Below, one piece after another: positions 4,127 through 7,880 of a stretch of DNA of 64,000 bases (its first letter is position 1; every line of letters starts with the position of its first letter). Below the pieces are notes generated by a model. That model had not been told where the DNA came from. It saw only the letters and a program-made list of their open reading frames with translations, and ran no database searches. Location: the IMG/VR virus record IMGVR_UViG_3300032562_000003, positions 1-64,000 of that record. One strand, given 5' to 3'. The position numbers and the translations under genes were made by a program.

Positions 4127-4237
4127 TTAGTTGACTTCGGGTATCTGATTGCTACTTTTATTAAGACACTTATTCGATAATTAACCGTTAGGTAGTTGAC
4201 ATTGGTCATCTATCGATATAATATAAAAATATAATTT

Positions 4238-4324
4238 GGACGTATTAGTATAGTGGTCGAATACACCTGGCTCTTAATCCGGACGCTTAGCGCATCGTAG
4301 GTTCGAATCCTACTACGTCCTCCA
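4238..4324 (+). tRNA. Atypical tRNA, anticodon CTT (Lys) with long variable arm
   Basis: Acceptor GGACGTA/TACGTCC, T-arm GTAGG-TTCGAAT-CCTAC, loop CTCTTAA, variable hairpin CGC-TTA-GCG, encoded CCA. Confidence 0.75.
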
Positions 4325-4333
4325 TTAAATTAT

Positions 4334-4409
4334 AGCAGTGTAGCATAGTAGCCAATGCAACAGATTCATATTCTGTCTATCGTGGGTGCGAGTCCCATCA
4401 CTGCTTCCA
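4334..4409 (+). tRNA. tRNA-CAT (elongator Met or Ile2)
   Basis: AGCAGTG/CACTGCT acceptor, ACAGA-TTCATAT-TCTGT anticodon arm, T-loop TGCGAGT, CCA. Confidence 0.85.
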
Positions 4410-4460
4410 CTTTTGCCCAATTCAATTGACACCTGAATTGTATTAGAATAAATTGAATAT

Positions 4461-5255
4461 TCAATGGCTCATGGGTCTGCTAGGTGTGGTCGAAGTAACA
4501 CACCTAGGAAGACGAATATCTTTGCTCATTATTCGTTCAATATTTCCTACCGCTGCTAAGCGTAAGTCGTCATCTTCTCGAATGTATCTCTCTCCTTTAA
4601 TTTCTACCCAGTGATCGTAGTCCTTTAGATAGAAATCCGGATAATATTTCCTTGTTTTGCCTGCAGAATCGGTGAATGAGAAATAAGTAGTGGTGTTTTT
4701 GATCCACTGTATTTGGTGTTTATCGAGTAAAAGCGCAAATTGATACTCTGCTCCAGAATCCATCTTGTGCCCGCGGTAAATGCATGTTTTCTTTCGTGTA
4801 GAATTGGGATGATATTTGTTCTTATTGCTACATGCAACGGAACAGTATTTCCTAGTCGATTCACATGGCGTCACCGAAAAAATAGTGCCACATTCTTTAC
4901 AGACCAGTTTGGATCTTATGCGGGTGCTTCGGATAGGTTTGGATTTTTTAGGTTTGGCTCTAGCAACGTTGTTAAATTTAGCAGCACATGATTGATCGCA
5001 GTATGTACCTCCTCTTCTAACATACGGCAGTGGATTATTACACTGTTTGCAATGTTTAGGATTATGTAGGTAAGAACTCGTTGCAATTTCTCGATCTTTG
5101 TTAGCTCTTATTCGAATTCCTTTGCTGATATTTTCACCATTATTAGAACATGCGGCTGCATATGTAGGATCGTGCCAATGTAAATGGGAACGCAGTCCGC
5201 GTTCCGAGTGAAAATATTTGTCGCACGCGGTGCAGGTAAAGGTATTATTTGACAT
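4461..5255 (-). mobile_element. Free-standing putative homing endonuclease (C2H2/Cys zinc motifs + PD-(D/E)xK domain) within the tRNA region
   Basis: CTACDKYF..L.SHLHWH, several CxxC, DSGAE...YYPDFYL...VEIKG. Confidence 0.75.
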
Positions 5256-5432
5256 CAGTGATCTCCAGATAAGTATGTTTGTGGGACAGCCCGGACTCCA
5301 GACTGGGTTTCAAAGAACTACAACTTCTTTGATTACCACAGTGTATTTATTCCTTTTAGCAGTTACCCAAAAAACTTTACAATCACCTAGTAATTTAGTA
5401 TAAAGAACAAGTAATTTACAGAGGAATAGAAA

Positions 5433-5999
5433 ATGAAGGTATCACTGCGTAAGGCAAATGCACTGCAAGTTGCTATCAATGAAGCAATCAAGGGGCTAAA
5501 CTTCAACTACACGGTTGGGCTGAATGAGTTCCAGGACACGATTGCTGCAATCGCAGCGGCTGCTACTACTTTTAGTACTAGCGTCGGTCGTCGTACGGCT
5601 CTGCTTGATGCCCTCTACGAGATTCGCAAGTCAGTTGATGCTGTTAATAACAGCTACGATATCAATAGCACGCTTGCAAATATCGCTCGCCTAGAAAAGG
5701 ACATTCAGTTCTACGGTTCTTATGCTAAGGCTGAGGTTCGTGCTGAACAAGCTGTCATCGACGGTAAGCTAGCTAAGATCCGCACTCGTGCAGAAGATGC
5801 ATTCGGTTATAGACGAGCCGGCGAAGTCCAAACGTCTGTACTCACTACCGAAGACGTAAAAAATTACCGCAGCATTGTTGCTGAATGCAAGAAGCAAAAG
5901 CAAAAGCTGCAAGATGAACTTCTCGAATCCAACGTTCGCAACGTCATTCATCTGACAGATAAGACTGTTGCGGTTCTGCAGGCCGAGAACATCATCTAA
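5433..5999 (+). CDS. Coiled-coil hypothetical protein
   Basis: 188-aa helical ORF with GAGGA RBS. Confidence 0.8.
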   Translation: MKVSLRKANALQVAINEAIKGLNFNYTVGLNEFQDTIAAIAAAATTFSTSVGRRTALLDALYEIRKSVDAVNNSYDINSTLANIARLEKDIQFYGSYAKAEVRAEQAVIDGKLAKIRTRAEDAFGYRRAGEVQTSVLTTEDVKNYRSIVAECKKQKQKLQDELLESNVRNVIHLTDKTVAVLQAENII

Positions 6000-6000
6000 C

Positions 6001-6275
6001 GGTTTGGTGGTATGCCTTGTAGCGCGAACTGCAGGGCAAAACCACCCGAAAAGAAAGAGAGATTAGAGTAGACACCGTAAGTTTCATTAGAAATTTACAT
6101 TTGACAGCTCCGTTTTTGGCATCATAATTACGTGACCCGAACTATTAAAGACATTTTGCACTTTGCTGTTCGAACATATGTAGTTTTTGTAGATTGTGAA
6201 GTGTCTATTGCACACAAGGGTGGCTCTTAAGAGCCCCGCTGTTTTTTGCACAGTCTATGACTTACTCTTTCTTTT
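6001..6275 (+). ncRNA. Candidate structured RNA downstream of the coiled-coil gene
   Basis: GGTGG.GCCTTGTAG/CTGCAGGGC.CCACC hairpin; AAAGAG..TAGAC pairs with GTCTA..CTCTTT; repeated TTGCAC/TTGT. Confidence 0.4.
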
Positions 6276-6515
6276 CGTATTTTTTAAAATAACTGAAAAA
6301 AGTTATTGACTTTGGTCTAGCATATAAGTATACTAACAAAATCGAGAGAGCGCAGAGAAACAAATGTTTCAACAGGTTCTCAATAAAAAATTTAAAAACT
6401 ATAAAAAGGTGTTGACATTCGTTAGCGTCTTTGATATAATGAAATATAAGCTGAGAAATCAGCGATCTTTGACAATTTAGAATAAGAATTGGGGGCATAG
6501 CCCCGATAATGAGAT

Positions 6516-6897
6516 AGCCTTGAGCAATTGAGGTTAAAGCAAGGTTTCCTATAAACTTGCGCCACCAATGGTCTCTCTATGCAAGCACGAACTAATCCGA
6601 AAGGATCCGTCCCTAGAAAGGCGGTAGTCGATAAGTTAGGTGTGTTGTCCGAAAGGATGTGTCACAGAGCCAGTCGGTGAGTGATAAGAGGGTTGGCGCC
6701 CTCATGACATGCAGCCAAACTAACGAACGATGAAAGTTAACGTGTAGTTATTGAGTCTGACCCTGCAAGGAAAGGCAAGATAGCATTTCGAGCGAAGAAG
6801 GTTTCATAAGGAGCCGGACCCGCAAAGAAACATTGAGTATCCCGCAAGGGATTCGGTAATGACCAAAGACGTTCGTTTAAAGCTGTAATCTCAGGCT
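6516..6897 (+). ncRNA. Large ornate ncRNA, GOLLD-like candidate (compact)
   Basis: No ORF; terminal helix AGCCTTGAG/CTCAGGCT; AACGAACG(6722)/CGTTCGTT(6870); many GNRA hairpins (TCC-GAAA-GGA x2, TCCC-GCAA-GGGA); upstream TTGACA..TATAAT promoter; next to tRNAs. Confidence 0.65.
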
Positions 6898-6920
6898 GTA
6901 CAAAAGATAAATAATATTAG

Positions 6921-7016
6921 ACTATTTTGATGAACACACTTACGAAAAAACTAAAAACGGTGATCATTGATCGGCCGGTGACGTTGAGATTAAGAAAGTG
7001 TGTTCTTCTAAATAGT
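6921..7016 (+). ncRNA. Long-stem small RNA candidate after a late promoter
   Basis: ACTATTT..GAACACACTT / AAGTGTGTTC..AAATAGT; GATAAATA at 6906. Confidence 0.4.
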
Positions 7017-7023
7017 TTAATGT

Positions 7024-7103
7024 CGCGGGGTAGAGAAGTCCGGTCGTTCTCGCCAGTCTCATAAACTGGAAATCGGTGGTTCAAATCCAGCCTCCCGCAT
7101 CCA
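7024..7103 (+). tRNA. Initiator-like tRNA-fMet(CAT)
   Basis: CGCGGGG 5' end with C1:A72 mismatch; anticodon arm CCAGT-CTCATAA-ACTGG; CCA. Confidence 0.8.
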
Positions 7104-7220
7104 TTCAGTTTCTTGTTTCTGTAAAAAACAATTGGTGGAGCCCGGTACTGCTGTATCGGTCCTATTAGGATAGAGGGTTGTAAGTGACCTGTACTTGACT
7201 GGGAACTTTCGAAGATTTAT

Positions 7221-7295
7221 GCGGGTGTGGTATAGGAGATGTGCCCTAGCCTTCCAAGCTAGAGAGGACCGGAGCGTTGCCGGCCACCCGCTCCA
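7221..7295 (+). tRNA. tRNA-Gly(TCC)
   Basis: GCGGGTG/CACCCGC, CTAGC-CTTCCAA-GCTAG, U73, CCA; non-canonical T-loop AGCGTTG. Confidence 0.88.
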
Positions 7296-7299
7296 ATAT

Positions 7300-7374
7300 G
7301 CTTCCATAGTATAATGGTCATTACAATGCGTTGCCAACGCGTGGAAATCGGTTCGATCCCGATTGGAAGCTCCA
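7300..7374 (+). tRNA. tRNA-Gly(GCC)
   Basis: GCTTCCA/TGGAAGC, ATGCG-TTGCCAA-CGCGT, TTCGATC T-loop, CCA. Confidence 0.92.
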
Positions 7375-7391
7375 CTTTTCATAAATACTAG

Positions 7392-7880
7392 ATGTTATTA
7401 ATCGCTTATCAGGGAATCTTTAACGGTCAAAATTATGATCAAGCCAACACACCAAACCAAATCGGTTTGGCGTTTAACCATGGATATTCGGTATCAGTGG
7501 ATGTTTGGAGAGTTAACGGTATTTTGTATTTAGGTACGGACCAACCGCTCACAGAAGTTACACCTGATTATCTGAAGGGTAATCGTTTTTGGATCAATGC
7601 TAGAAACGTCGAAATGCAAGAATGGATTTCTACACAGCCGATCAAATCATATCCTAATTATTTTTGGTATGACATAACCCATCCTCCACCGTACGTTACC
7701 ACTAGCGGCGGTCAACTGTGGACCTTCGGAACAGTACCCGTAAATAACTCTAGTATCGTCGTTCTTCCTGAAATAAATGACAGAGGGCTGTTGAGTACAG
7801 TCAAGCTAAATTGCTATGGAATCTGTAGCACATATCCTACGTTTATTAGACGTATGCGCACTGAAGGTAATTGGTACTAA
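7392..7880 (+). CDS. Degenerate glycerophosphodiester phosphodiesterase-like protein
   Basis: MLLIAYQG (usually HRG)...GYSVSVDVW...LYLG.D...GICS; catalytic His residues appear substituted. Confidence 0.5.
   Translation: MLLIAYQGIFNGQNYDQANTPNQIGLAFNHGYSVSVDVWRVNGILYLGTDQPLTEVTPDYLKGNRFWINARNVEMQEWISTQPIKSYPNYFWYDITHPPPYVTTSGGQLWTFGTVPVNNSSIVVLPEINDRGLLSTVKLNCYGICSTYPTFIRRMRTEGNWY

What the first reader, a model, noticed from the sequence alone, without database searches (positions are those of the whole stretch)
6516..6897. Compact (~380 nt) ornate ncRNA, GOLLD-like, in the tRNA cluster
Seen: ORF-free, with its own sigma70 promoter, terminal and long-range helices and many GNRA-capped stems. 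Known: GOLLD RNAs are large phage- and tRNA-associated RNAs of unknown function, typically around 800 nt. Inference from recalled resemblance only: a minimal GOLLD-type RNA or a new class.
Basis: partly seen in the sequence, partly recalled or inferred. Interest (0 to 1): 0.65.

Follow-up and report, generated by a model that had tools for sequence, protein, structure and literature searches.

The report
GOLLD RNA missing its conserved half
This is not a new RNA class. It is a phage GOLLD RNA gene that lost about 424 bases, nearly all of the conserved cage-forming 3' half, through a deletion between two look-alike hairpins, leaving an intact and apparently still expressed 5' "cap" domain.

Summary
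The structured, ORF-free RNA is real, but it runs from about 6447 to 6897 (about 450 nt), not 6516-6897. It scores only 16 bits against Rfam GOLLD (cut-off 150). Related lake jumbo-phage contigs carry a homologous ~390-nt stretch directly followed by a full Rfam GOLLD 3' domain of 189-213 bits. The window's last 47 nt match the extreme 3' end of that domain.

The window therefore holds a GOLLD 5' domain joined to the GOLLD 3' tip. About 424 nt are missing, including the linker tRNA. The junction lies in a 7-nt repeat, CGCAAGG (6843-6849), shared by two GCAA hairpins.

- **Structure:** the 5' domain has strong covariation (56 of 87 pairs change on both sides). The window keeps 86 of 88 predicted pairs.
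- **Distribution:** among 88 contigs with this 5' domain, only the window's own lineage has the deletion, and all its copies are identical.
- **Assembly check:** independent assemblies span the junction.
- **Expression:** a lake metatranscriptome holds an identical 174-nt piece.

Best reading: a lineage-specific, probably recent truncation that abolishes cage formation. A functional "cap-only" RNA is not excluded. This is a new variant of a known kind, of moderate interest.

The parts
6412..6440 (+). Sigma70-type promoter (TTGACA, 17 nt, extended TG-TATAAT). The start site is predicted near 6447.
   Evidence: 12 of 12 consensus match. The same promoter sits at the same distance upstream of full-length GOLLD genes in L014 and many other relatives. 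The start site is inferred, not mapped.
6450..6463 (+). Leader hairpin (5-bp stem, GAAA loop)
   Evidence: Relatives that have the promoter carry a hairpin at the same place, with different but complementary stems (sequence inspection).
6464..6489 (+). Conserved single-stranded leader before the first helix of the 5' domain
   Evidence: Aligned and conserved across relatives.
6490..6830 (+). GOLLD 5' (cap) domain. Helices:
- 6490-6494 / 6501-6505
- 6513-6522 / 6529-6535 (GCAA loop)
- 6539-6543 / 6556-6560 (conserved 12-nt loop)
- 6561-6564 / 6569-6572
- long-range 6585-6592 / 6736-6745, enclosing 6607-6611 / 6620-6624, 6627-6630 / 6728-6731, 6635-6639 / 6720-6724, 6640-6648 / 6704-6712, 6649-6650 / 6655-6656 and 6690-6693 / 6698-6701
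- 6747-6762 / 6769-6784
- 6786-6801 / 6814-6830
   Evidence: nhmmer E-values of 1e-39 to 1e-58 to stretches that directly precede Rfam-scored GOLLD 3' domains. RNAalifold finds 88 pairs, 57 with compensatory changes. In the pair count, 96.3% of cells are paired against 81% in shuffles and 33-40% when partners are slid. The window keeps 86 of 88 pairs. Many conserved G-U pairs fix the strand as +.
6832..6857 (+). Chimeric hairpin created by the deletion. Its 5' strand and loop come from the last 5'-domain hairpin. Its 3' strand comes from a hairpin near the end of the 3' domain.
   Evidence: Alignment of the window with 11 full-length relatives. Pairs 6839-6843 / 6848-6852 and 6832-6835 / 6854-6857 are read from the sequence.
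6843..6849 (+). Deletion junction: the 7-nt microhomology CGCAAGG, present in both parental hairpins. 423-425 nt are missing relative to most relatives (395-428 overall).
   Evidence: DNA contigs of three independent runs and of four to five IMG assemblies cross it without any difference.
6851..6897 (+). Retained 3' tip of GOLLD, about the last 45 of the 416 Rfam model positions. It holds two orphan 3' helix strands and the complete terminal hairpin 6882-6884 / 6894-6896 with its 9-nt loop.
   Evidence: cmscan aligns it to the end of RF02032 with high posterior probability. The matching segment in the full-length L014 is shown. The terminal stem covaries (GCU/GGC, GCA/UGC, GGA/UCC, GGU/ACC).
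7025..7374 (+). Downstream tRNA-Met, tRNA-Gly(UCC) and tRNA-Gly(GCC). No terminator lies in between, so they are probably co-transcribed with the RNA.
   Evidence: Co-transcription is an inference.
4461..5255 (-). Context: an endonuclease-like ORF inside the tRNA/GOLLD island. It is replaced by other DNA in a sister strain.
   Evidence: Matches PHROG HNH and endonuclease families. A homologue (26% identity, E 4e-12) is inserted between the two GOLLD domains in L142. Strain difference.

Best explanation
The element is the GOLLD RNA gene of an uncultured freshwater jumbo phage that has undergone an internal deletion of about 424 nt.

**How the deletion arose.** It joined two similar GCAA-tetraloop hairpins at a shared 7-nt repeat, CGCAAGG (6843-6849). 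This looks like replication slippage or microhomology-mediated repair. Endonuclease genes that invade this island may have favoured it.

**What was lost.** The 3' half of the last 5'-domain hairpin, the linker with its embedded tRNA, and Rfam GOLLD model positions 1 to about 372 of 416.

**What remains.** The ancestral promoter, the leader, the complete 5' domain, a tidy chimeric hairpin, and the last 47 nt.

**How it most likely works (inferred).** The RNA is still transcribed from the consensus promoter and folds as the 5' domain. [quoted passage not shown] The ring contacts, and all contacts between the two half-shells, lie in the deleted 3' domain, so this RNA cannot build the closed cage and cannot enclose a linker tRNA.

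I read it as a fairly recent, tolerated loss-of-function allele, fixed in one phage lineage that also has a shrunken tRNA island. It is an expressed relic rather than a designed 'mini-GOLLD'.

**What is shown and what is inferred.** Shown: homology, deletion borders, covariation, lineage restriction, the junction in independent assemblies. Inferred: deletion mechanism, loss of cage formation, recency.

Confidence is about 0.93 that it is a 3'-deleted GOLLD, and about 0.6 for the whole statement including 'relic'.
For: **Homology**
- Window 6458-6850 matches about 390-nt stretches in 12 or more related loci. Window 6839-6919 matches about 410 nt further downstream in the same loci.
- The DNA in between is a full RF02032 GOLLD 3' domain of 189-213 bits.
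- The full alignment shows one clean gap of 423-425 nt, flanked by the repeat.
- The Rfam alignment of L014 places the gap at model positions 1 to about 372.

**The short form is derived**
- All uncut contigs outside the window's lineage, among 30 viral and 58 metagenome contigs with the 5' motif, are full length.
- The distance from the first helix to the 3' loop is 394 nt here and 793-850 nt everywhere else.
- The window sits among full-length forms in the 5'-domain tree, with moderate support.

**The deletion is real DNA**
- Contigs from four other IMG samples are identical across the RNA.
- Logan contigs of three runs cross 6850 with no difference.

**No second copy found**
- The 258,859-base record holds no other GOLLD.
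- A complete relative of 360,683 bases has exactly one.

**The same kind of event elsewhere**
- L080 carries a partial duplicate of its 3' domain, with a 60-nt deletion exactly between two copies of a 12-nt GCAA-hairpin repeat.
- L142 has an endonuclease-like ORF inserted at the boundary between the two domains.

**Reduction of the island**
- The genome has 5 tRNAs, against 10-26 within about 8.5 kb in most relatives sampled.

**Consistent with a recent event**
- The orphaned tail is as conserved as tails of intact GOLLDs: 0.65-0.91 identity, against 0.56-0.83 for full-length pairs.
- All deleted copies are identical.

**Roles of the two domains**
- In env-38 GOLLD the 5' region forms the cap and the 3' region forms the ring and equator (doi 10.1038/s41586-025-09073-0).
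- The 3' domain of the S. agalactiae GOLLD assembles on its own (PMC12990946).
Against: - There is no sign of decay in what remains. The window keeps 86 of 88 pairs, as intact GOLLDs do (83-88 of 88, leaving aside two divergent sequences).
- Its share of changes at highly conserved columns (0.18) lies within the range of full-length sequences on similar branches (0.16-0.26).
- The promoter and leader are intact.
- An RNA library holds an identical 174-nt piece of the 5' domain and nothing from the flanking genes.
- The lineage is found in at least 19 lake metagenome runs.

All of this fits continued selection on the 5' domain just as well as a recent deletion. The nearest full-length 5' domain is only about 80% identical, so the deletion cannot be dated.
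Confidence: 0.6

Rival explanations
1. Functional cap-only GOLLD. After losing the 3' domain, the 5' domain is kept by selection as an autonomous module. It assembles through its own 5'-5' bridges into an open ring or rosette of six or seven copies, or acts as a monomer, and serves whatever the cap does in the intact particle, for example binding a host or phage partner.
For: - The 5' domain structure, promoter and leader are fully intact despite a long branch.
- The chimeric junction hairpin is perfectly paired.
- An exact-match RNA contig lies inside the domain.
- The lineage is abundant and widespread in lake metagenomes.
- In env-38 GOLLD, each 5' domain makes eight bridges to neighbouring caps, and the two domains are structurally separate.
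Against: - Only one lineage with no sequence diversity shows it, so there is no post-deletion evidence of selection.
- The orphaned tail is equally well preserved although its partners are gone. This points to too little elapsed time rather than to constraint.
- In the S. agalactiae GOLLD the 3' domain, not the 5' domain, drives assembly, and the 5' domain only caps it.
- The RNA evidence is one low-depth contig. By my estimate, a piece that size would fall wholly inside the RNA by chance about one time in ten, and DNA carry-over is not excluded.
Confidence: 0.27
2. The short form is ancestral, or is an independent RNA class, and the 3' domain is an insertion acquired by the other phages.
For: The two GOLLD domains fold separately and evolve at different rates.
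Against: - The window's last 47 nt are homologous to the very end of the 3' domain, including helix strands whose partners are absent here.
- The 3' domain is the universally conserved part of GOLLD across bacteria and phages.
- The window sits among full-length sequences in the tree, with moderate support.
- The junction sits in a repeat present at both ends of the missing segment, which is the signature of a deletion.
Confidence: 0.03
3. Assembly artefact: the assembler collapsed two similar hairpins and skipped the 3' domain.
For: The junction lies in a short repeat, which is where assemblers can err.
Against: - A 7-nt repeat is far below the k-mer size of assemblers.
- The same junction appears in four to five IMG assemblies from different samples and in Logan contigs of three runs at depths of 17-84. 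There are no loose ends at 6850.
Confidence: 0.02

Closest known systems
GOLLD RNA (Rfam RF02032; env-38 tetradecamer, PDB 9MEE as listed in PMC12990946)
   Same: - The 5' domain is homologous to 5' domains that are contiguous with Rfam-scored GOLLD 3' domains in sister phages.
- It has the same promoter and leader, the same place in a phage tRNA island, and the same 3'-terminal hairpin and loop.
- The first ~130 nt of env-38, as printed in the paper's supplement, show the same order of elements. This rests on visual comparison only.
   Different: - About 424 nt are lacking: the linker tRNA and about 372 of the 416 Rfam model positions.
- It scores 16 bits against a cut-off of 150.
- It is about 450 nt long instead of about 800-880.
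- All ring and equatorial contact elements of the cage are gone.
S. agalactiae GOLLD 3'-domain-only construct (laboratory truncation; decamer, PDB 9LMF as listed in PMC12990946)
   Same: A GOLLD reduced to one of its two structural domains.
   Different: It is the reciprocal half and was made in the laboratory. The 3' domain self-assembles. The papers read here report no 5'-only assembly and no natural 5'-only GOLLD.
ROOL RNA (Rfam RF03087)
   Same: A large ornate RNA associated with phages and tRNA genes, which forms cages.
   Different: There is no match even at E up to 10, and ROOL has an unrelated sequence and fold.

Membership tests
GOLLD (RF02032) | Scores at or above the Rfam gathering threshold (150 bits) | tested here: not met
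   16.1 bits at 6685-6897 (E 0.039 for the 421-nt search). Nothing appears at gathering level.
GOLLD (RF02032) | The universally conserved 3' domain is present | tested here: not met
   Only about the last 45 model positions are present (6851-6897). Relatives have 423-425 nt more.
GOLLD (RF02032) | The 5' domain is homologous to that of genuine GOLLDs | tested here: met
   nhmmer E-values of 1e-39 to 1e-58. The 5'-domain profile scores 336 bits, although the window's own sequence was in that profile. The homologues are contiguous with 189-213-bit GOLLD 3' domains.
GOLLD (RF02032) | Conserved secondary structure supported by covariation | tested here: met
   For the 5' domain, 56 of 87 pairs change on both sides and 0 of 500 shuffles reach the observed values. 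The window keeps 86 of 88 pairs.
GOLLD (RF02032) | Located in a phage or prophage tRNA island | tested here: met
   tRNAs lie at 4238-4409 and 7025-7374. The record is a 258,859-base virus record, and relatives lie in dense tRNA arrays.
GOLLD (RF02032) | Length of about 700-850 nt or more | tested here: not met
   About 450 nt. The distance from the first helix to the 3' loop is 394 nt, against 793-850 nt in relatives.
GOLLD (RF02032) | Assembles into a closed homo-oligomeric cage | not testable with these tools
   This needs mass photometry or cryo-EM. The elements that make the ring and equatorial contacts in published structures lie in the deleted part.
   None of these families matches within 6500-6920 at E up to 10. 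None matches over 6000-7400 either.

The most novel reading that the evidence does not exclude
The GOLLD 5' 'cap' domain is an autonomous functional module. In this abundant lake phage it is maintained and expressed without the cage-forming 3' domain, and it forms an open ring or acts alone. GOLLD's biological activity would then reside at least partly in the cap, and the closed cage with its enclosed tRNA would be dispensable.
Probability: 0.25. Interest if true: 0.6.

Novelty: new variant of a known kind. Interest (0 to 1): 0.38.

Why it matters
GOLLD's function is unknown. Its two structural domains have so far been separated only in the test tube, and only the 3' half has been studied alone. 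Here nature has made the reciprocal construct, a 5'-only GOLLD, in a phage that is common in lake metagenomes.

At the least, this shows that a wild jumbo phage persists without the conserved cage-forming half and its linker tRNA. It also suggests that the many near-identical GNRA hairpins make GOLLD genes prone to deletion.

If the remnant proves to be under selection, it would separate the function of the cap from that of the cage. It would also provide a natural 450-nt construct for assembly and binding studies.

Tried and rejected
- **Rfam:** at gathering level on the whole window, only tRNAs appear. At E up to 10, only the weak GOLLD tail match is meaningful; the others (Lacto-rpoB, SOX2OT and so on) are chance.
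- **GenBank phages:** blastn matched only the tRNAs.
rejected for lack of covariation. A similar pairing between the leader and the 3' end in the minimum-free-energy fold of 6447-6900 is also rejected, because the leader forms its own conserved hairpin.
- **Relaxed constraint:** three tests (pairs kept, changes at conserved columns, terminal branch length) were inconclusive. The window looks like intact GOLLDs on similar branches.
- **Strain comparison:** uninformative. The sister strain has 7 differences in 4,575 nt, all upstream of the RNA. The following 3 kb are identical as well.
- **Longer contig of the same phage:** it could not be searched for a second GOLLD because the record is not held.
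- **Alignment to env-38:** Only a visual comparison of a supplement snippet was made.
- **Flanking ORFs:** Pfam and PHROGs gave no function for 5433-5999, and only a family of unknown function for 7392-7880.

Full report
**What is at the coordinates**

The window is the first 64 kb of a 258,859-base IMG/VR virus record, estimated 73% complete, so it is a jumbo phage. The stretch 6516-6897 has no ORF of 40 aa or more apart from a 48-aa minus-strand frame that clips its start. It lies between tRNA-Lys and tRNA-Met (4238-4409) and tRNA-Met, tRNA-Gly and tRNA-Gly (7025-7374). A perfect sigma70-type promoter with an extended -10 lies at 6412-6440.

It is better for 6447-6900 (z = -3.15). Rfam gives no match at gathering level. 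At relaxed thresholds the only meaningful signal is a 16-bit match to GOLLD (RF02032, cut-off 150). Its last ~35 nt align almost perfectly to the 3' end of the model.

**Relatives settle the identity**

I used the upstream 188-aa ORF to fetch 52 related viral loci. nhmmer showed that window 6458-6850 is homologous to a ~390-nt stretch in a dozen of them (E 1e-39 to 1e-58). Window 6839-6919 matches a second place about 410 nt further downstream in the same loci. Rfam scores the DNA in between as a complete GOLLD 3' domain, at 189-213 bits in 13 loci, often with a tRNA in the linker.

A full alignment shows one clean gap in the window, 423-425 nt long against most relatives. On the 5' side, relatives have a GCAA hairpin that ends the 5' domain. 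On the 3' side they have another GCAA hairpin near the end of the 3' domain. Both contain CGCAAGG, and the window has a single hybrid hairpin with the crossover inside that 7-mer (6843-6849).

The deletion removes Rfam model positions 1 to about 372 of 416. What remains downstream (6851-6897) holds two helix strands whose partners are gone, plus the complete terminal hairpin. The 3-bp stem of that hairpin covaries among relatives.

**The 5' domain is a real, conserved structure and is intact here**

In an alignment of 24 distinct sequences (A1), RNAalifold predicts 88 pairs, 57 of them with compensatory changes. For the 87-pair version:

- 96.3% of cells are paired, against 81% in shuffles and 33-40% when partners are slid.
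- 56 pairs change on both sides.
- None of 500 shuffles reaches any observed measure.

The window keeps 86 of 88 pairs, as do the full-length sequences (83-88, leaving aside the two most divergent ones). Conserved G-U pairs fix the + strand.

Its two strands belong to a local GNRA hairpin and to the loop of the terminal hairpin, and relatives show no compensation.

The RNA also starts earlier than 6516. Many full-length relatives share the promoter, a leader hairpin with covarying stems (6450-6463 here) and a conserved leader. Others have a tRNA directly upstream instead.

**The short form is derived, real and confined to one lineage**

I scanned IMG/VR and the JGI metagenome contigs with a motif of the 5' domain and found 30 and 58 contigs. 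Every contig outside the window's lineage that is not cut by a contig end has the 3' domain. Only the window's own lineage lacks it (L002/L003/L004, L060, L069, L070, L083, L131, L132), and its RNA is 100% identical in all copies.

The distance from the first helix to the 3' loop is 394 nt here and 793-850 nt in all others. In a maximum-likelihood tree of 5' domains, the window sits among full-length forms with moderate support. Its terminal branch is 0.23, similar to three full-length sequences.

Logan contigs from three runs cross the junction without any difference, at depths of 17-84, with no loose ends there. An assembly artefact is therefore very unlikely. The held genome has no second GOLLD. 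A complete relative of 360,683 bases with terminal repeats has exactly one.

**Mechanism of the deletion (inferred)**

GOLLD DNA is full of near-identical GNRA hairpins, which act as short direct repeats. I found an independent example in L080. There, a partial duplicate of the phage's own 3' domain carries a 60-nt deletion exactly between two copies of a 12-nt repeat formed by two GCAA hairpins.

The boundary between the two domains is also a target of mobile DNA. In L142, a 255-aa endonuclease-like ORF sits between the 5' and 3' domains. It is homologous (E 4e-12) to window ORF 4461-5255. That window ORF matches PHROG HNH and endonuclease families and is replaced by other DNA in a sister strain. 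Breaks made by such enzymes and repaired through microhomology would produce exactly this junction. This step is an inference.

**What the RNA can and cannot do (inferred from published structures)**

[quoted passage not shown] Residues 421-833 form the ring and the contacts between the half-shells, and the linker points inward (doi 10.1038/s41586-025-09073-0). For the S. agalactiae GOLLD, the 3' domain alone assembles into decamers, and the 5' domain caps the assembly and makes it homogeneous (PMC12990946).

The window's RNA has the cap and none of the ring. It cannot form the closed cage or hold a linker tRNA. Whether it forms an open ring is untested, and the papers read here report no 5'-only assembly.

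**Relic or functional remnant?**

Evidence that it is still used, or was only recently broken:

- The promoter and leader are intact.
- The pairs are intact.
- Its share of changes at highly conserved columns (0.18) is within the range of intact GOLLDs on similar branches (0.16-0.26).
- A lake metatranscriptome holds a 174-nt contig identical to 6643-6816 and nothing from the flanking genes. It is low depth, DNA carry-over is not excluded, and I estimate about a one in ten chance that a piece of that size would fall wholly inside the RNA.
- The phage is present in at least 19 lake metagenome runs.

Evidence for a recent, unselected loss:

- It occurs in a single lineage without any diversity.
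- The orphaned tail is as well preserved as tails in intact GOLLDs, which is hard to explain by function because its partners are gone.
- The genome's tRNA island is shrunken: 5 tRNAs, against 10-26 within about 8.5 kb in most relatives sampled.

The nearest full-length 5' domain is only about 80% identical, so the event cannot be dated. I put about 0.93 on '3'-deleted GOLLD'. Within that, I put about 0.6 on a tolerated relic and about 0.27 on a functional cap-only RNA.

**Comparison and novelty**

The element works like, and descends from, GOLLD. It fails the family's defining test, the conserved 3' domain and the Rfam score. It is best described as a natural domain-deletion variant of GOLLD, not as a member in good standing and not as a new class.

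I found no report of a natural 5'-only GOLLD among the GOLLD papers I read. The literature search was a single search on the family name, so absence is not proven.

Noticed in passing
L142:1767-2534 (minus strand of the locus, same strand as its GOLLD): A 255-aa Cys-rich, endonuclease-like ORF is inserted between the 5' and 3' domains of a GOLLD gene. It replaces the linker tRNA and the first ~39 profile positions of the 3' domain. It is homologous to window ORF 4461-5255.
   Followed up: partly
L080:1829-1966 (also L087, L113, L125): A partial duplicate of the phage's own GOLLD 3' domain lies directly upstream of its complete GOLLD. It carries a 60-nt deletion exactly between two copies of a 12-nt GCAA-hairpin repeat.
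   Followed up: yes
window 4156-5422: The segment holding two tRNAs and the endonuclease-like ORF 4461-5255 is replaced by about 1.8 kb of different DNA in the sister strain L004, which is 99.85% identical elsewhere. This looks like presence or absence of a mobile element.
   Followed up: partly
window 6101-6245: A sigma70-like promoter (11 of 12, 6101-6128) is followed by a stable hairpin fold (z = -2.4) and an intrinsic terminator (6222-6235 plus a T run). This could be an sRNA of about 110 nt. It is about 71% conserved in L009-type relatives and has no Rfam match.
   Followed up: partly
G000:C1:202603-203008 (outside the window): The phage encodes a permuted tmRNA with the tag ANENDAYEGLALAA. 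Relatives L040 and L045 score as betaproteobacterial-type tmRNA in Rfam, which hints at a betaproteobacterial host.
   Followed up: no
whole record G000, compared with L005-L136: The 258,859-base record has only 5 tRNAs. Most relatives sampled carry 10-26 tRNAs within about 8.5 kb around GOLLD, so the tRNA/GOLLD island is reduced in this lineage.
   Followed up: partly
window 6877-6938: About 50 nt from the GOLLD 3' hairpin into the spacer are identical to L014, although the flanking sequence is much more diverged. L142 matches 6907-7019 at 95%. Logan assembly graphs branch at 6908-6938. This looks like a mosaic or recombination boundary shared among co-occurring phages.
   Followed up: partly
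linker of GOLLD in L007, L008, L009, L014, L050 and others (for example L014:5362-5432): By my reading of the alignment, the tRNA embedded in the GOLLD linker has a different anticodon loop in different relatives. The linker tRNA therefore seems to be exchanged between lineages while the surrounding RNA is conserved.
   Followed up: no
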